A stretch of 64,000 nt of DNA from Trichoplax adhaerens (lineage: Eukaryota; Animalia; Placozoa): assembly GCF_000150275.1 (NCBI RefSeq), contig NW_002060949.1, forward strand, positions 1,671,836 through 1,735,835, in the 5' to 3' direction. Under the pieces are notes generated by a model. It had not been told where the DNA came from. It worked only from the letters and a program-made list of their open reading frames with translations, and made no database searches. The position numbers and the translations under genes were made by a program. Position 1 is the first letter of the stretch. The number at the start of each line of letters is the position of its first letter. Below, one piece after another: positions 55,053 through 63,703 of this stretch.

Positions 55053-56580
55053 TTACAAGAATTGCTGCCTGGGCAATATCAGATCTCCATCATCACTTGG
55101 CTTAAATTGAGCGTTGATATTTTCATCAGTGACCTCTTCAAGCGTGGCAGGATCCCATTTTGGGTTATGGTCACGATCGATTAATACAGCTTTAGCTCCT
55201 TCATAAAATCTTTGGTCTCCGTCATTCTCTGAGTGATACGGTGTTCTATTAACAAAACATCAGCTAAGCAAGATGCTGTAGCTCTTTTTTGTAAAGTACG
55301 AATGGCGACTTTTAATACAGTAGGAGTTAATTTACGATAATGTTTGAGGCAATTTTAGTCCACTCTGAACCATCTTCTTCTAGTAGAGTAAAGATTTCTT
55401 CTATAGTTTTTCCATTAAAGCACTTATTGATTGTATTTATATACTTGGAAAGAAAACTCTCCACCTTTATACTATATTTTACCAAGTAACGATGAAATTG
55501 ATTTTATTAATATTCGTTATGGAGTGATAAAACAAGTATGGCCTTAGTCAATGAGTTAATCTTAAAAAATATAAGACGAAGGGAATGCAAAAGATAATAT
55601 TGTCATTTGCTATGGAGTAAAAACTGCAGTTATGACTAACTATACAAGTAAAGATTTGGCTTAATTTATTAATATGGTATGATATGGAATTGTCTGAGCA
55701 TGACTTATTAAACTTTACGTATTCTAAATCGGCTTGTTAGCATATTCTGCATAACGTAAATATAAGTCTACCATAGCACTATTTACGTTACAGTTTTTAC
55801 TGTTCCTAGCTTACGCAAATCGTTATTCTAGTGTTGATACTCTTTCATTATTGATTAACTTACCTTCATGTGATATTGATTTAGAATTTCTCGATTTATA
55901 CGATCCGTAATATTATCTTGACTAATAAATTTCTCTTCTAATTCGCAGATATCTTGTGATCGAATATAGTGGGTAGCTATTGCAGCAAAATAAACATCTT
56001 TACCTTTTAATCTATTCTCTATTAACGAAAATAGAAAGTTTTACTAAGGAAGGCTATCGTTTTGTATAGTAATATTGGAATTAAATGATTGGATCTAATA
56101 TTAATTTTTAAAATAACATCGATTTTCTCCTATCGTAATCGCTGTTTTTGCTTGTCTCGGTTCTGATATATAATATAATTTTATAGGCATAGAATGTATA
56201 TCTATTTAACGCATCATATATGCAATCTGATCACTGCAGCCAAGTGAATTTGTTTCGAGAACACTATTAAACACTTATCATTTTTGAGACTATTCTATCC
56301 AAAGTCTTATCAAATATCAATAAGATAAACTTATAACATTCACCTGTAAGGCCTAAATATATGCCCAGTCTACCTTTCAATCGTAGTAAAAAGTACGATC
56401 CTTCTACATTCGGATACAGACCTATAGATGTTTTTGGCATGGCAAATATTGTACGTTCGGTTATGACTCGATAGAGCCCATGAACTGACAAGCCAACACT
56501 ACCACTTATTGTTATTTCATCGATAAGGGCTACAAAAAGAGTCATCGAAATGCCTAGGGTGCAATTATTTGGACGGTGAA
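55053..56580 (-). pseudogene. HIBCH: 3-hydroxyisobutyryl-CoA hydrolase pseudogene (intron-containing, 5'-truncated)
   Basis: VGLSVHGLYRVITERTIFAMPKTSIGLYPNVEGSYFLLRL, IATHYI and FYEGAKAVLIDRDHNPKWDPATLEEV. The conserved MPET/FPDV motifs are changed to MPKT/YPNV. Frameshifts near 55355 and 55215. No recognisable 5' exons. Confidence 0.85.
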
Positions 56581-58554
56581 AAGAGGACAAAATACTTAAA
56601 GTATAACTTGCTAGCTTTTAAAGTCTCGATGAGGCGTTAATAAACGTTAGTTATGTCGTCTCACAGAAAGTACCGATAGACACGATGTTTTAGACGATAC
56701 TAAATTGCATTCAGATGCAAATTATTTTTACTTATCGAGAAGAAAGAGAAAAGGATGAGAAGGATTAAACTAAGTTAATTCCTGTAGGAGAACTGTATCA
56801 ACAAGAATAACCACAGATGAATATGGTGATGAATAACAGTAAACAGCAATCCCAGCGGTCGCGATGAAAGTATCATGGACTAACTATGATGACTGGAAAG
56901 TATGGCATGATTTACGCACTAGAGTAGATAATCTACCGGCATAGTAACTTGCCGGCCATTAAAACAGGAGTTTAGCATGTCCCACTGAGCAGGGAAAATC
57001 AATTATAATCAATTTGTTTAAATGATTGCATTTCTGAATCAATAGATTTGACGAGTATTAGCATCAACTTTACAATCCAGCTACTGTAGGCACAATCTGT
57101 GTGTTAAGATGAATATTTGCACTTTACTGTACTTGGATTCTAGAGAAAATGAATATTTCCGCCAGCAAAATATTTCTTTAAGCCTGCAATAAACCTTCGA
57201 GTGATCAATAATAAGATGGCCTTCTCACTGTATGATTATATTTGTATCTTTTTGTTTGTTTTAACTATAGCGTGTACTTCGGTTGAAGGTTAAGTTTAAT
57301 TGGAGACTACACAATTGCAATATAAGAATCCATAGTTTTTCCCTCTCACCTCCGATTGGCCGTGATGGTATTAGCAAAAAATCGACTTCTACTTTACGTA
57401 TGTTATATCAATTATAACAAGAGTACAGAGCATCGAAAAATTGCAAAAATTGCAAAAGCCATTCGTTGATATTCTATAGTTATTATATCGCCGATCGAAC
57501 GGTATTAAATAACCTTTTAATCTATTACCCGTAACAAAATGATAAGAATACCATGACAAATAAATTTTTGCATATTCTAATGATTACATTATTGATGATT
57601 ATAGTTGGCTAGTAACAAGTAACTTTATTCTTTTACTGTTAAAATACGTAGAAAAATTCCATTCATTTACGATATAAATTGAAGACATTAATTAGCATCC
57701 CCTTCAGATTGTTAAAACTAGTTATTAATACACATGAGTCTGTAGGTTTATGTGTTATATGAAAGTGAAGATGCTTTACCTAGCCAAATTGGAGCTACAA
57801 TAGATATTATTATAATACTATATAATTAGCCGCTTCATAATATTTCGTAACTTTAAATAAATCATAAATATTATCTAATTATTGGATTATTTGTTATCAC
57901 AAATTATAAATATTTATTTTATATCTATCATTATTTTATTGTAATGTAATAAATATATTTTTATTTTAGATATGTATACTTTACATATGAGTAAGAGTTA
58001 CTCCAGACAGGATAATGAGAAGAAGTATTTTAGTAGATTCGATTTCTTACAAATTGGTATTTACTAAAATTTCATCATTATCCTTAGAAAGTAAATGATA
58101 TAATTGTCTTGTGTGCTATTCATAATTAACTTCTATGGACAAGTGATAAGACAAATTATATCATCAATTAATGTTACGGGATTTAAATTTTAATCCGTAA
58201 CTCTGATCAGCTTTTATTGTAATATTAATTACAATTATCATGCGATATGATCATGACAAGGGCTATAGGTAACCTTCATTAAGAGTAGGCATTTTAGTAG
58301 CTTTCAACTATAGTTATTCCTTTATCGCGTGTTAAACATTCATCATATTGCTGTTAATGATTATAGTGGAAGTTAAACACAGAATGCTCTAACGACTTGT
58401 TCGTATCCATGTCCAACATCAAAACTTCGTCACCTAATTATCTTATTGCTTGATCGCATAATAAATAATATCAATTAAGGTGTTATTCATCTTCGTATTA
58501 TATAGCTAGCATTTTCGTTACTTAATGTGGGTTCTACCCGTATCGTGGTAAATC

Positions 58555-61500
58555 TTACACCATAACTTCATCATCACTGGACTGATTATCTTGTTGCTGA
58601 GTTTGAGGATCATCAGGTATGGGTATAACAAGAACAGTCGATAATCCTAACTTTGAATAGACCATCTCCGTAGCTTTAGCTGCACTGGATTCTTGATCAA
58701 AAGTCAAATAACATGTGCCCATATCATGTTCCTGCCATTGCATTTCTGCTGTTTTTATGCGTCCATACTGACTAAAGACACGCTTTATTTCCTTTTCTGA
58801 TGTGGTGGCTGCAAAACCGATAATGGCAATCTTCCTCGATGGCTTAATGGACACCATTGCTTTAATAGCCGGCAGTACTTGGATCATTTTATAATCGATT
58901 GTGTGTGATTTTGTTACTAAAATACGTTGAAGTGGATCGGCACTTTTAAATTCAATAGTAGTAAAGGATTGGATAGTACCAATAACTTTGTCTAATCGCT
59001 TCTTAACCTTATCTATTTTAAAAACTTGACCAAATTGATTAAAATATTCGGTTAATTTGGATTCGTTGGTATTCATACTCAATCCTCCAACGTAAATTTT
59101 CTTCTCATCATAACTGTAGCAACTATCTTTTGGTAGTGGAATAGTTTTCCTTTCTTCCTGGCTAGTTTTACGACCAATTGACGAAGTAGTTGCTGCTCTT
59201 AAACGGATTTCGTTAATATTACTCTTATTTGATTTAGAATCTTGAGTAGCAGTTGAATTTAGTTGAGTGGCTTTATTGCCGATTAATGAAGTACTTGCCG
59301 TCCTTAAACGGGCTTCGTTAATATTGGCCTTGTTTGATTTAGAATCTTGAGCGGCAGCCAAATTCTGCTTCTCTTTCAACGCTGTTGTATTAATATTGAT
59401 CTTGTTGGATTTATAAGCTGCAGTTGCAGTCGAATTTTGCTTTTCTTCAGATGTAGCTCTATTGTATTTGTGATCTTGAGGAATTATCGATTTCTGCTTT
59501 TCTTGAGATCTAACAGGACTAACATTAGTCCTATCAGATTTGTAGTCCTGAGTTGTTGTAGTTCGACTTTGTTTTTCCTCCGATGCCGATTCTTCCTCAT
59601 GATTCAATTTCTTCTTCTTCAGCGAAGAGACTCTTCTAGGTGGTTGTAGTTGCTGGCTATGTAAAGGCTTACTCGATTTCAGAGCTTGTTTTCCATTATC
59701 ATCGGCTTGAGATTGGCCCTTTGGTTCTATCCGTTTATTAGATATTGGGTCATTTTTAGCTGTGGCTGCTGGTGTTACAGATTTCTTCTCTTCTACTTTA
59801 GCTGAACTTAGTTTAATCCGCTTTAATGAAGATTTTCGTTTTGGTACTATGACTGAAACTGTTGGTTTATCCTTTTCTACTTTTGAATCATCATTCTGTT
59901 GAAGTTGATTTTGGTGATTCAAGACTTTCCCCTAATGTAAGTAAAGATAGGATGGCATCAAGAATGGCCTCAATTAGATGAAATGTAGGTAGAGAACTTT
60001 AGCTAGAAAAAAGTTAAGACCATTATCATGTCTTGCAAACCTCGATTTTATTATCAGCCACTGGTACTTCATTCAAAGTTCCATTCTAAATTTAGTAGAA
60101 ATATTGATGGGCTAACATTAGTATCTTTAAAGTTTCAAATTCTCATTTAAAATCATCCTTTAATGTCGGTATACAACCTTAACGATATCAATCGTCTCTA
60201 ATGACTCCGATAATTGATCGTTAGTGATATCCATTTTACTATCACTTTCATCTCTGCTTATGCTAATTTCAATGTCTGATTCTTGCAATTCCTCTTTGAT
60301 TTGTCGCTTTGATAAAAATTGGACATTGGATGTAGGCTATACAAAGGATTAATTTGGAATTGTGAAAATCAAAATTCAACAAAAGGAAATTTTCAATTAT
60401 TTCAAAATATTATTCTAACCATTAATTAAACTCAGTTAACTGTATATAGATAAGCTACATAAAAGATTAATTTAGAGTTAGGAAAATCAAAGTTCAGATA
60501 AGGAAATTTTTTATTTTGGCAAAATATTTTTCTAACTATTAATTGAAACTCAGTTAATTGTTTATAGATAAGACTGTATCGCAATAAATCATCGGTTTTA
60601 TGGAGCTAATTTAATTAAGTAACGTCAATAAAATTACATTTGTTTGCTTGATTTTTTGCATCATGTTAGTGATTTTAGATTTATGTAATTGCGATTCTTG
60701 AACTGGTTCATCATCTAATGTTGATGAAAAGGTTACAGCTCTCCTAATTTACATTGGCAAAAGCAAGAAGTTTAGTACGAGATACGCTCAATGAATTAAT
60801 TTAATATGAAATGATGTTATTTCATCAATTTCTACATTACTAAAAGAGTTATTTACGAGACATGACCATAACTTTACTTGTTTTTAGAGTTAAAATAAAC
60901 TTGAGTGCATAACAAAGCTCTATAGTTTAGCATGAAAGACAACTATTAATCTTTACCTTTTTGTCTGTGGTGAGTGAGAGGTTGAGTAATTAGATGATGA
61001 TTTGGGTTGACTGTCAGATTTCTTATTACTTTGACTCCTATCGGAATTAATAGAACAATTTACAGATTGGAATATTATCAATTACCAGTAATTTAAGGTA
61101 GGTGGAAAATAGACCTATAGGAAATTAGCCCATACAGGAAATATCTCACTACAGAAATTCGTATACATACGGATTTGTTGGCCTTCTACTTTTACTTTGC
61201 GTTTCTCGTCGACTTTTCTTACTTGCAGAATCAAAGGCATCTCGTAACTGTGTGTGTAGAGAATAAAACAGGAATTAATATTAGAGTACAGCAAAGGTAA
61301 AAATATTGGAGTCATTCCTAAAGAAGTAAACGGATTAAAATTAATTTATATACTTGATAATTTCTGGCACAGTGGAATACAAATATTATGAATCCCTAAA
61401 TAGCACAGAATTAAATTTGATGGTTTTAAATCAAGAATTTTCCTACAATTGTCCTAATAGCATATCAAATATCGAAATGTAGCTTGCCTGTAATGAATTG

Positions 61501-63703
61501 GTTATAGCAAAGATATATTGTAATGCTACGCTATCACTTATAATAGTCAAACTTCCTAATATCCAGCCAACTCCGAGTAATGGTAATAAAACGATGGCTC
61601 CTTTAAGGGCAGTTCTAGCATCAATTAGAGAAAATAATAATTAATTTTGTATCAATCTTTATCATAATTACTGTCCAATGATCTTTTGCTATTTAAAATC
61701 GATATAGATCTATCAGGAATATGTGCATATATATTCTACCGAATAAAATGAATGATTGCGACAGATGAAAAAAATTAAACATGTATGGAACCAATCTTTA
61801 TCATAAATATCACCTTTTTATACAAAAATATTCGTATTTGTGTTCATAATTAAAATATCAACCGCATATTAATAAATGTGAATGTTGTATGGTTACTAAT
61901 AAACAACGAGGTCAGAATTTTATTGCTAGGATTAAGCAGAAGAAGTAATTAATGTCATCCAAACCAAAATGATAAAGCAGAAACTTGGTGATTCGATGAT
62001 ATCGTTGCAAATAAATGTAATTAAAGTAATACTTGAGGTGATTATCAAGTGTAAGTGGAATAAGTTTAGGTACTTAAGATGATAAAATAGAAAGCATACT
62101 AATTAGGGAACCAGAATATTCCAAAATCATTACAATTACGGTTATAGTGTAATGATATATCAATAATTAATAGAAGATGATAGCAGGGAAGCAAAGTAAT
62201 CTATAGGCTTACTTTAACTTTATAAATCGATCTTCTTGTTTAATTTTAGAAATTTTCTGGGTGCTTAGCATTGTTTTGATAGCAATTGCGAAGACAAAGA
62301 TGTTGATCTATTACATACAAATAAAAAAAGGCATTTTTGTTATGCTGTAAATTAGCCTAGATACCACAGCTGCTGCAATTTTAAAAATTCTAGCAATTGA
62401 TAATAATGTAAAATTATATGGCAGCGTAATCTTATAATTAAGCTCAGCTTGAATTAAAACTACCGTAGAAGAAATTTTGTCTTTACTGGCTATTATCGTG
62501 TTAATATAAGTAATCAGATATGAGAAATAATTATAAGAACATATTAAAAACTATATAAATCAAAATGTTAATGTCAGAACTTACAATTACAATAAGCCCC
62601 ATAGGAACTACAAAAGCCAAGAATATAGGCGGTTGGCTTGCTAGCCAACAGCTAGAAACGGCGTGAAGCAGTCAGTAGGAATTATATAAGACCTTCATCT
62701 TTATGATATTTATGCTTACGAGTATTTAAATAAGCCAGACAGTATATTGAGTAAAGTATAAATAATTATTAAACTTAGTGGCTTGCATACCGACATTAAA
62801 TTAGAATCTAGCTATGAAAAGATATTGATACATCTACTCGTATATCTGTTGCTACTTAGATACGAAGAATTGTTAAGAAGCAGCTATACAGACATGTATA
62901 ATGCACTAGATAACAGTAATTGCATCCATTTAAGGATTTTACTTGCAAGTTATAGGGCAATTTTGACTATACATTGCATAGCGATGATAAACTTAATTTC
63001 TATGGTGTCTCGTAAATCATGATCCCTTTGAAATATGAGAAATTATTGCAACTTACGCTCTCGGATTCAAGTAACCGTCTATTCCAGATGTACTTAGAGT
63101 GATGCCCAATGTTGTTGCAACTATGATCATTGGTATACCTAATATTTAACGTAAAGTATTTGCTTAATTTCCCTCATATGTATAGCTAATAATAGATAAG
63201 ACCACTGTTTAAATAATTGGAAAGTGAGAGATGTTGCATTGGTCTTAATTTTTCAACTTACCGTAAGCAGGTACGAAATACCATACTAATTTTGAGCTAA
63301 CGTCGAAAACTTTAACCAGCATTATATACATATAAATTCCTTCATTTAGCATCCACATAAAAGTCGCTAAAAGGACGTAATGTAATACAGCCGCCATAAC
63401 AGTACAAAATACCTGAAGTAAATATTGGAGTAGGCCAATGAGATTATATAAAGATTGAATAAACGCTCACGGGCACGATAAATTAAAGCAACTTTAGAAA
63501 ACTACGGTTATGATAGCGAACTTAAAAATTTTGATCCGCATTTATTTGGGATAGGTATTGTGTAAATATATTTACAGTAATAATTGCTACAGTACCTTAC
63601 CTTATTTTGAACCGCTGTTAAACCGGATATGATCAAGATATTCGCAATAAGGAGATTAACAAATAGGTTCATGTTGATAATATTTTTGGTATTTGAAATT
63701 CGC
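58555..63703 (-). CDS. Adhesion-type (class B2) GPCR whose C-terminal tail ends in two RRM domains; TM1 and ectodomain lie beyond the window
   Basis: TM2 NIINMNLFVNLLIANIL, TM3 FCTVMAAVLHYVLLATFMWMLNEG, AYGIPMIIV, CWL, AFVVPMGLIVIINI, LLPLLGVGWILG and NSLQ|GFIIFVFHC. Then exons 61247-61171, 61037-60957, 60743-60638, 60336-60178 and 60085-60041 join in frame to 59931-58555 (KKIYVGGL...YFNQFGQV; RKIAIIGF...VFSQYGRI...GTCYLTF). Confidence 0.82.

What the first reader, a model, noticed from the sequence alone, without database searches (positions are those of the whole stretch)
58555..63703. Adhesion-type GPCR fused to a cytoplasmic tandem-RRM module: candidate membrane receptor that binds RNA
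Seen: after TM7 (SLQ|GFIIFVFHCARNYQ), five short GT-AG exons have matching phases (0,2,2,0,0,0) and no stops. They lead into a 1377-nt terminal exon (acceptor cttacattag|GGG at 59931). That exon has no ATG until inside RRM1, so it cannot be a stand-alone gene. It encodes a basic low-complexity linker, two RRMs (RNP2 IYVGGL and IAIIGF; degenerate RNP1 QSFTTIEF and MGTCYLTF) resembling Musashi/hnRNP A/D, and a hydrophobic C-terminus (DDEVMV, PDZ-ligand-like). Known: adhesion GPCRs carry their accessory domains extracellularly, and I know of no 7TM-RRM architecture. Inference: the receptor could tether mRNA at the membrane, or release an RNA-binding tail, coupling signalling to local translation.
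Basis: partly seen in the sequence, partly recalled or inferred. Interest (0 to 1): 0.95.

Follow-up and report, generated by a model that had tools for sequence, protein, structure and literature searches.

The report
Adhesion GPCR with RRM-pair tail
In this placozoan-type genome, an adhesion-type G-protein-coupled receptor gene most likely continues past its last membrane helix into a cytoplasmic tail ending in two hnRNP-like RNA-recognition motifs. Three other receptor genes in the genome share this design and no paper I found describes it, but no transcript data could be obtained.

Summary
On the minus strand, 7tm_2 exons (63703-61354) are followed by five short exons. Their phases chain without stops into a 1377-nt terminal exon (59931-58555). 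That exon has no ATG for its first 284 codons and carries two Pfam RRM_1 domains.

Beyond the window end the same gene has CUB, Ig, HRM and an intact GPS site, so it is a genuine adhesion GPCR.

The main new evidence is comparative. A profile of this RRM module finds four strong hits in the 105.6-Mb genome. All four lie 1.4-4 kb downstream of an adhesion-GPCR TM7 exon on the same strand. All four share one exon-phase signature after TM7: a 42-nt exon, a helix-8 exon (0 to 2), a short exon (2 to 2), then a phase-2 acceptor.

The tail exons score as coding on a non-circular codon test. The RRM pair is closest to hnRNP D-like and hnRNP A1/A2B1, but its RNP aromatic residues are partly lost.

This scan already reported one paralogue on other DNA (note s1-772795). 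That note says its fused gene model is public; I could not verify this. Neither database search returned a protein containing this locus's RRM exon.

The single-gene reading is about 75-80% likely. RNA binding is untested.

The parts
63601..63703 (-). Exon E1 (TM2 region). TM1, GPS, HRM, Ig and CUB exons lie beyond the window end, in L002.
   Evidence: 7tm_2 profile positions 31-63, E=0.0033; boundaries.
63262..63412 (-). Exon E2 (TM3 region).
   Evidence: 7tm_2 profile positions 75-121, E=2.6e-12.
63057..63138 (-). Exon E3 (TM4 region), in phase.
62585..62651 (-). Exon E4, in phase.
62213..62307 (-). Exon E5 (TM5 / third intracellular loop), in phase.
61488..61614 (-). Exon E6 (TM6-TM7), followed by a GC-AG intron.
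   Evidence: 7tm_2 profile positions 203-246, E=5.8e-6; donor gcaagc.
61354..61395 (-). Exon E7: a 42-nt exon holding the end of TM7 (GF..F.FHC motif), phase 0/0.
   Evidence: The same 42-nt exon occurs in at least 13 paralogous loci.
61171..61247 (-). Exon E8: helix-8 continuation (N-x-x-L-R-D-A-F) plus a basic stretch, phase 0->2.
   Evidence: Codon score in the top 0.5% of the null. Counterparts with the same phase in paralogues B, C and D.
60957..61037 (-). Exon E9: Ser/Lys-rich, phase 2->2.
   Evidence: Codon score in the top 0.6%. Short 2->2 exon also present in B, C and D.
60638..60743 (-). Exon E10: phase 2->0. It holds the first candidate internal Met (MMQK).
   Evidence: Only one frame is open. 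Codon score in the top 3%.
60178..60336 (-). Exon E11: acidic and Ser-rich, phase 0->0, weak donor. It holds the second candidate internal Met.
   Evidence: Only one frame is open. Codon score in the top 1.4%.
60041..60085 (-). Exon E12: 45 nt, phase 0->0, weak donor. It may be a cassette exon.
   Evidence: Codon score in the top 0.6%.
59104..59931 (-). Terminal exon E13, linker part: 276 codons of basic/Ser/Thr/Asn-rich low-complexity sequence with no Met. It contains in-frame repeats spaced 105 and 72 nt apart.
58870..59103 (-). RRM1 (RNP2 IYVGGL; RNP1 degenerate, QSFTTIEF).
   Evidence: Pfam RRM_7 and PARP14-RRM at residues 277-354. AlphaFold strands and helices. Alignment to hnRNP D-like.
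58618..58833 (-). RRM2 (RNP2 IAIIGF; RNP1 MGTCYLTF).
   Evidence: Pfam RRM_1 at residues 372-424.
58555..58617 (-). Acidic/Gln-rich C-terminus ending in V-M-V, followed by the stop TAA (58557-58555).
   Evidence: The PDZ-ligand reading is inference only.
58213..58218 (-). AATAAA about 340 nt after the stop: a candidate poly(A) signal.
   Evidence: Read directly. Inference only.

Best explanation
This is one gene for an adhesion (class B2) GPCR. Its layout is CUB - Ig - HRM - GAIN/GPS - 7TM. After helix 8 come about 170 residues of short-exon tail, then a 276-residue low-complexity linker, then a tandem RRM pair derived from the hnRNP D/A-B/Musashi lineage, ending in a hydrophobic C-terminus.

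It is one of at least four paralogues in this genome built the same way. I infer from genome size, contig count and composition that the genome is Trichoplax adhaerens. The receptor-RRM fusion therefore arose before these paralogues diverged and has been kept since.

What is shown:
- the domains;
- the stop-free, in-phase exon chain;
- the coding character of the tail exons;
- the fourfold linkage with a shared intron-phase signature.

What is inferred:
- that the exons are actually spliced together at this locus;
- that the RRM pair sits in the cytoplasm as the receptor's effector or scaffold end.

My preferred mechanism is that the tail holds an RNA or RNP partner at the membrane through the RRM pair. 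Receptor activation, phosphorylation of the Ser/Thr-rich linker, or internalisation would then change that hold, linking adhesion or mechanical signals to local RNA regulation. Direct RNA binding and a protein-binding 'pseudo-RRM' role are about equally likely, because several RNP aromatic residues are lost.
For: (1) In-phase, stop-free chain with AG/GT borders. E13 opens exactly at its acceptor and has no Met for 284 codons.

(2) 7tm_2 matches colinearly over the TM exons. GPS 7.7e-15 with HL|T intact, HRM, CUB 6.2e-22 and Ig lie upstream on the same strand.

(3) RRM_1 twice. Both RRMs align colinearly to hnRNP D-like at 1.4e-21. The AlphaFold model has mean pLDDT 81.7 with two beta-alpha-beta-beta-alpha-beta units. 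Foldseek's top hits are hnRNP A2/B1 and UP1.

(4) A genome-wide profile search gives a top four of B (251 bits), A (245), C (228) and D (92). The next hit scores 35 bits. Each of the four lies 1.4-4 kb downstream of an adhesion-GPCR TM7 exon on the same strand. Nineteen other adhesion-GPCR downstream regions have no such module.

(5) The post-TM7 exon pattern (42 nt; 0->2; 2->2; phase-2 acceptor) is shared by A, B, C and D. In C this needs an alternative, weaker C10 acceptor.

(6) Orthologues of paralogue B's terminal exon exist in two other assemblies at 54-55% identity. They are conserved from exactly the acceptor position, through the Met-less linker. The only pre-RRM Met in B is not conserved.

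(7) Codon log-odds for E8-E12 fall in the top 0.5-3% of the null, with the model frame best or tied. Intron segments score like the null.

(8) Linker repeats are spaced at multiples of 3 nt.
Against: - There is no transcript evidence.
- No protein containing E13 was returned by the 1.84-billion representative search (best hit 3e-27, a generic RRM protein) or by the 5.8-billion search within 252-801 aa. So I found no public model or translated transcript for this locus, and no orthologue.
- The donors of E11 and E12 are weak.
- E10 and E11 contain in-frame Mets that an internal promoter could use.
- Tail exons E8-E12 have no significant similarity to the paralogues' tails, so their homology cannot be used as support.
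- RNP1/RNP2 aromatic residues are only partly retained.
Confidence: 0.68

Rival explanations
1. There are two transcription units. The receptor mRNA ends within E8-E11, by intron read-through to a nearby stop or by early polyadenylation. A separate mRNA for a soluble RRM protein starts from an internal promoter and uses the Met in E10 (about 60664) or E11 (about 60234). Alternatively, both the fused and the separate products are made.
For: - In-frame Mets exist in E10 and E11.
- Every tail intron has a stop within a few codons of read-through.
- The E11 and E12 donors are weak.
- An AATAAA lies in the E10-E11 intron (read).
- No database protein was found that joins the two parts at this locus.
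Against: - E8 (helix 8) ends in phase 2 and E9 ends in phase 2, so the receptor reading frame needs further exons. E9 and E10 score as coding in exactly those frames.
- In paralogues B and D the RRM exon follows the short 2->2 exon directly, with a phase-2 acceptor, which leaves no room for a separate first exon.
- In an orthologue of B there is no Met between the acceptor and RRM1.
- The 7TM-RRM linkage is kept in four loci whose RRM modules are only 16-24% identical.
Confidence: 0.15
2. It is one gene, but the RRM pair no longer binds RNA. It acts as a protein-interaction module (pseudo-RRM or UHM-like) that recruits cytoplasmic partners to the receptor tail.
For: - Judged against hnRNP D-like, RRM1 keeps the RNP2 Tyr and one RNP1 Phe but loses the second RNP1 aromatic and the basic first residue.
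- RRM2 loses the RNP2 aromatic and one RNP1 aromatic.
- In paralogues B, C and D these positions are even less canonical. The residues invariant across the family are core residues.
Against: - Locus A retains three of the six canonical aromatic positions.
- The basic linker directly upstream could add non-specific RNA affinity.
- Many RRMs with degenerate RNPs still bind RNA. That statement rests on general knowledge and was not tested here.
Confidence: 0.4
3. E13 is a decaying relic or retro-copy of an hnRNP gene that happens to lie behind the receptor and is not expressed as protein.
For: The RRM module is intronless in all four loci, as a retro-copy would be. No database protein covering it was found.
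Against: - A 458-codon open frame in a genome of about 30% G+C is far beyond chance.
- The codon score is coding-like and the linker repeats are in frame.
- The predicted folds are confident.
- Four independent loci all keep the module open.
Confidence: 0.03

Closest known systems
Paralogue B in the same genome (G000:C1414:11140389-11142894, + strand), reported earlier by this scan as s1-772795
   Same: It is an adhesion GPCR. It has the 42-nt TM7 exon, a helix-8 exon (0->2), a short exon (2->2) and a phase-2 acceptor into a Met-poor Ser-rich linker followed by two RRMs. I re-derived this independently.
   Different: - B enters its RRM exon after three introns, whereas locus A has three extra phase-0 introns (E10-E13).
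- The RRM modules are only about 21% identical.
- By TM3/TM7 exon similarity, B is not A's nearest 7TM paralogue.
I found no database protein containing A's RRM exon.
hnRNP D-like / hnRNP D (AUF1) / hnRNP A1 and A2/B1 / Musashi tandem-RRM proteins
   Same: Two RRMs with the same spacing, colinear alignment over about 178 residues to human hnRNP D-like at E=1.4e-21. The family-typical His before beta-4 is kept. Foldseek's top hits are hnRNP A2/B1 and UP1.
   Different: - There is no Gly-rich, RGG or PY-NLS C-terminal region. The protein ends about 40 residues after RRM2.
- The RNP aromatic residues are partly lost.
- The module is attached to a 7TM receptor instead of being a soluble nuclear protein.
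- The predicted orientation of the two domains differs from the crystal structures (rmsd about 15 A), which may simply reflect a flexible linker.
Canonical adhesion GPCRs (latrophilin/ADGRL, BAI/ADGRB, CELSR and others)
   Same: 7tm_2 core, GPS with HL|T, HRM, and extracellular adhesion domains CUB and Ig. It has a long cytoplasmic tail with a hydrophobic C-terminus. From general knowledge, several adhesion GPCRs end in PDZ ligands.
   Different: As far as I know, and in the papers searched, the accessory folded domains of known adhesion GPCRs are extracellular. None has cytoplasmic RRMs.
Another adhesion GPCR of this genome with a folded cytoplasmic module (scan note s1-780386: 7TM plus dead tandem phosphatase domains)
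   Same: An adhesion GPCR spliced in frame from TM7 into a folded intracellular domain pair, which suggests a placozoan habit of appending modules to receptor tails.
   Different: The appended module is different (PTP-like, not RRM). I did not examine that locus.

Membership tests
Adhesion GPCR (class B2) | Secretin-type 7TM core (Pfam 7tm_2) | tested here: met
   Colinear exon-by-exon matches to profile positions 2-29, 31-63, 75-121 and 203-246 of 250. The best exon scores 2.6e-12.
Adhesion GPCR (class B2) | GAIN domain ending in a GPS autoproteolysis motif just before TM1 | tested here: met
   PF01825 GPS at 7.7e-15 on L002:413-637 (minus strand), with C-x-C-N-H-L-T-N-F-A intact. The GAIN body itself gave no Pfam hit exon by exon.
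Adhesion GPCR (class B2) | Extracellular adhesion or hormone-binding domains | tested here: met
   CUB 6.2e-22, Ig_2 2.2e-8 and HRM 7.2e-6 on upstream same-strand exons.
RRM (Pfam RRM_1, PF00076) | Profile match above the gathering score, with the beta-alpha-beta-beta-alpha-beta fold | tested here: met
   55 bits against a cut-off of 20.7, in two stretches. The AlphaFold model has mean pLDDT 81.7 and two such units.
RRM (functional RNA binder) | Conserved RNP2 and RNP1 aromatic and basic residues on beta-1 and beta-3 | tested here: inconclusive
   Three of the six aromatic positions are kept in A. The basic first RNP1 residue is lost in both RRMs. Conservation is poorer in B, C and D.
RRM (functional RNA binder) | Measured RNA binding | not testable with these tools
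   Needs EMSA, RNA Bind-n-Seq or CLIP.
hnRNP D / A-B subfamily (as an orthologue) | Tandem RRMs with the family's spacing and signature residues | tested here: met
   E=1.4e-21 over both RRMs to 7zir hnRNP D-like. The named nearest representatives are hnRNP D-like or D0 proteins.
hnRNP D / A-B subfamily (as an orthologue) | Soluble protein with a Gly/Tyr-rich or RGG C-terminal region | tested here: not met
   The frame stops about 40 residues after RRM2 and no Gly-rich region is present. The module sits behind a 7TM gene.
Single fused transcript (7TM plus RRM in one mRNA) | Reads or cDNA spanning junctions E7 through E13 | not testable with these tools
PDZ-ligand C-terminus | A class I or class II C-terminal tripeptide bound by a PDZ protein | tested here: inconclusive
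   A ends in V-M-V, C in V-M-L and D in L-Q-L, all of the hydrophobic-x-hydrophobic form. B ends in R-F-F and its orthologues in T-F-Y. This is pattern only, with no binding test.

The most novel reading that the evidence does not exclude
A family of surface receptors in one of the simplest animals binds RNA directly through its cytoplasmic tail. Adhesion or mechanical signals at the membrane would then be passed straight to mRNA localisation, stability or translation. Alternatively, after tail cleavage, an hnRNP-like fragment would be released to act elsewhere. Either way this would be a receptor-to-RNA signalling route with no G-protein or kinase intermediary.
Probability: 0.3. Interest if true: 0.9.

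Novelty: new variant of a known kind. Interest (0 to 1): 0.72.

Why it matters
Adhesion GPCRs are known for modular extracellular regions and poorly understood intracellular signalling. A conserved, four-member subfamily carrying a folded hnRNP-type RRM pair inside the cell would be a domain architecture not described in the literature I could search.

It points to either a direct receptor-RNA link or a new use of RRMs as receptor-tail adaptors. It also shows how placozoans diversify receptors by appending whole modules to the C-terminus; the intronless RRM exon is consistent with capture of a retro-copied hnRNP gene.

On the practical side, I found no public protein containing this locus's RRM exon. 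Placozoan receptor catalogues built from existing models may therefore miss such tails.

Tried and rejected
- **Joined protein.** Every search was exon by exon, by reference. Phases were checked per exon.
- I redid the work with coordinates only.
- **Protein searches at this locus.** The search with E13 (252-801 aa range) found only generic RRM proteins. The exhaustive representative search found nothing better than 3e-27. So no orthologue or public model of this exon was found.
- **Paralogue C.** A search with its 803-residue exon found nothing.
- **Tail similarity between paralogues.** I suspected that the E10|E11 junction sequence matched a contiguous stretch of paralogue D's terminal exon. 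BLASTP of each exon separately was not significant, so I dropped the idea. tblastn of E8-E12 against all fetched paralogue loci found only the 42-nt TM7 exon family.
I could not verify its claim that paralogue B's fused model is public. The length window of the search for homologous proteins excludes long proteins, and B's exon returned only two foreign ORFs.
- **First codon test.** It used the other RRM tails for training and was partly circular. I replaced it with one that excludes them.
- **Literature.** Two full-text searches found no paper combining adhesion GPCR, RRM and placozoans. Two candidate papers were read and do not mention such a tail.


Full report
**Setting**

The window is G000:C1408:1671836-1735835. 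The genome has 105.6 Mb in 1414 contigs and about 30% G+C. From these figures I infer Trichoplax adhaerens; no tool names the organism. The feature lies on the minus strand and runs off the window's upper end.

**Checking the observation**

I located every proposed exon and translated each one in all three frames.

- After the TM6/7 exon E6 (61614-61488) comes a 42-nt exon, E7 (61395-61354).
- Then follow E8 (61247-61171), E9 (61037-60957), E10 (60743-60638), E11 (60336-60178) and E12 (60085-60041).
- The terminal exon E13 is 59931-58555.

The introns are 92-301 nt long. All tail exons are AG/GT-bounded. The intron after E6 is GC-AG, and the donors of E11 and E12 are weak.

E13's acceptor AG is the end of an in-frame TAG, so its 458-codon frame opens exactly at the acceptor. 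Its first Met is residue 285, which lies already past RNP2 of RRM1. A product starting at that Met would therefore lack the first strand of RRM1.

Pfam finds RRM_1 at 7.6e-15 with two stretches. It finds 7tm_2 colinearly across the TM exons.

**The receptor is a genuine adhesion GPCR**

In the 10 kb beyond the window (L002) the same strand carries:

- CUB (6.2e-22)
- Ig
- HRM (7.2e-6)
- a GPS motif (7.7e-15) with the HL|T cleavage site intact
- the TM1 exon directly after the GPS

**Are the tail exons more than a lucky path?**

In an AT-rich genome a stop-free, in-phase path can often be found by choosing among many GT and AG sites, so I looked for independent signals.

*Codon score.* I built a codon log-odds score trained on 64 long open frames from the window and from loci that carry no RRM tail. 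E8, E9, E10, E11 and E12, each in its model frame, fall in the top 0.5%, 0.6%, 3%, 1.4% and 0.6% of about 9,000 stop-free non-coding segments of similar length. The model frame is the best-scoring frame for E8-E11. For E12 it is tied with a frame that contains stops. Stop-free segments inside the intervening introns score like the null, so this is not a regional composition effect. An earlier version of this test was partly circular.

*Helix 8.* E8 begins with the continuation of the class-B helix-8 motif (N-x-x-L-R-x-A-F), so it certainly belongs to the receptor. It ends in phase 2, which forces a further coding exon.

*Linker repeats.* The E13 linker holds direct repeats spaced 105 and 72 nt apart, both multiples of three.

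**The decisive comparative result**

I searched the genome with the RRM module and found two distant copies inside long open frames. A 7tm_2 scan then showed an adhesion-GPCR hit just upstream of one of them, on the same strand.

*Paralogue B (L010).*
- The TM6/7 exon is followed by the same 42-nt exon, a helix-8 exon (0->2) and a 57-nt exon (2->2).
- A phase-2 acceptor then leads into a 353-codon exon holding a Ser-rich linker and two RRMs.
- The open frame ends four codons upstream of that acceptor, with no Met there.

*Paralogue C (L009).*
- It shows a TM6/7 exon, the 42-nt exon, a 0->2 exon, 2->2 exons and a phase-2 acceptor.
- That acceptor leads into an 803-codon low-complexity exon, followed by a two-RRM frame.
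- C's chain is less clean than the others. The strong C10 acceptor is out of phase, and only a weaker alternative acceptor keeps the 2->2 pattern.
- The low-complexity frame and the RRM frame are offset by one base near an A7 run. I did not resolve this.

*Screening further receptors.* I fetched 10 kb downstream of 20 further adhesion-GPCR TM7 exons and screened them with a profile of the module. This found a fourth case, D (L015), with the same 42-nt / 0->2 / 2->2 / phase-2 pattern and a single C-terminal RRM. The other 19 regions had nothing.

*Genome-wide profile search.* The hits rank B (251 bits), A (245), C (228) and D (92). The next hit scores 35 bits and is not near any 7tm_2 hit. In this genome, therefore, this RRM subfamily occurs only behind adhesion-GPCR TM7 exons.

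*Independence of the loci.*
- The four loci lie on three contigs, and the two on the same contig are 4 Mb apart.
- Their RRM modules are 16-24% identical.
- Their 7TM parts are not each other's nearest relatives.
- The linkage is therefore old and has been maintained.

*Rough chance estimate (my own).* About 40-50 TM7 exons, each with 4.5 kb on one strand, cover roughly 0.1% of the strand-aware genome. Three further chance co-occurrences are therefore negligible.

**Cross-species support (paralogue B only)**

B's terminal exon has two ORF-called relatives from other assemblies, P0167 (Logan) and P0168 (ENA), at 54-55% identity.

- Conservation begins exactly at the position of B's acceptor and runs through the Met-less linker.
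- B's only pre-RRM Met is Ile in P0167.
- Upstream of the conserved start, the called ORFs read like a T-rich intron end.

**What the RRM pair resembles**

- By sequence, the best solved relative is human hnRNP D-like. Both RRMs align colinearly at 1.4e-21. hnRNP A2/B1, A1, Hrp1, hnRNP D0 and Musashi follow.
- The nearest named database proteins are hnRNP D-like or D0.
- An AlphaFold model built on a 20-sequence alignment has mean pLDDT 81.7 and two RRM folds.
- Foldseek's top hits are hnRNP A2/B1 and UP1. The relative domain orientation differs from those structures.

Against hnRNP D-like, RRM1 keeps the RNP2 Tyr and one RNP1 Phe. RRM2 keeps one RNP1 aromatic. The basic first RNP1 residue is lost in both. 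Paralogues B, C and D are still less canonical, and the invariant residues are core ones. The module is intronless in all four loci, which is consistent with capture of a retro-copied hnRNP-type gene. That is an inference.

**What could not be done**

- No protein containing E13 was found in the length-limited search or the exhaustive representative search. I therefore found no public model, translated transcript or orthologue for this locus.

**Earlier work in this scan**

After I had found paralogue B, the findings index showed that the same 2506-nt stretch had already been reported as an adhesion GPCR with an RRM-pair tail (s1-772795). That note says the gene model is public and that no paper describes it.

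I confirmed the exon chain independently. I could not confirm the public model. My two literature searches and two papers read also found no description. A second note (s1-780386) describes another adhesion GPCR of this genome fused to a dead phosphatase pair. I did not test it.

**Verdict**

- The single-gene reading is well supported by comparative anatomy. I put it at about 75-80% for this locus, and lower for the exact E10-E12 exon set.
- The main rival is an internal promoter giving a separate or additional soluble RRM protein from the Mets in E10 or E11, at about 15%.
- Whether the tail binds RNA or serves as a protein adaptor is open, at roughly even odds.

Noticed in passing
window 60336-60572 (intron between E10 and E11): A 118-bp unit is repeated twice in tandem at 82% identity. 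The 3' end of the second copy supplies the E11 acceptor, and the first copy ends in a similar ...tgtag.
   Followed up: no
window 61480-61487 (donor after E6): The intron after the TM6/7 exon uses a GC donor (gcaagc), while the equivalent intron of paralogue B uses gtaatc.
   Followed up: no
window 59167-59447: The linker of the terminal exon contains diverged direct repeats spaced 105 and 72 nt apart (35 and 24 codons). These give repeated peptide blocks of the type QDSKSNK.NINE.RLR.
   Followed up: partly
L009 about 1955-1990 (G000:C1414:7114955-7114990, minus strand): In paralogue C the 803-codon low-complexity frame and the RRM frame are offset by one base next to an A7 run. This could be an assembly indel, a real frameshift or a very short intron. 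It is unresolved.
   Followed up: partly
L015 1761-2340 (G000:C1411:6585584-6586163, + strand): Paralogue D carries only one RRM and stops right after it (ending L-Q-L). It may be a truncated member of the family.
   Followed up: partly
G000:C1414:11124255-11125952 (+ strand), with its downstream region L021: An adhesion GPCR lies in tandem 12 kb upstream of paralogue B and has no RRM module in the 10 kb after its TM7 exon. So tandem neighbours differ in tail type.
   Followed up: no
window about 56340-56560, minus strand: About 2 kb downstream on the same strand there are exons that, by my reading, translate like an enoyl-CoA hydratase / 3-hydroxyisobutyryl-CoA hydrolase-type protein. This would be the next gene. 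It was not tested with any tool.
   Followed up: no
P0167, P0168, P0169, P0170: ORFs from Logan and ENA assemblies of unnamed organisms are 54-55% identical to paralogue B's tail exon. They are presumably from other placozoan lineages. None was found for locus A or for paralogue C's large exon.
   Followed up: partly
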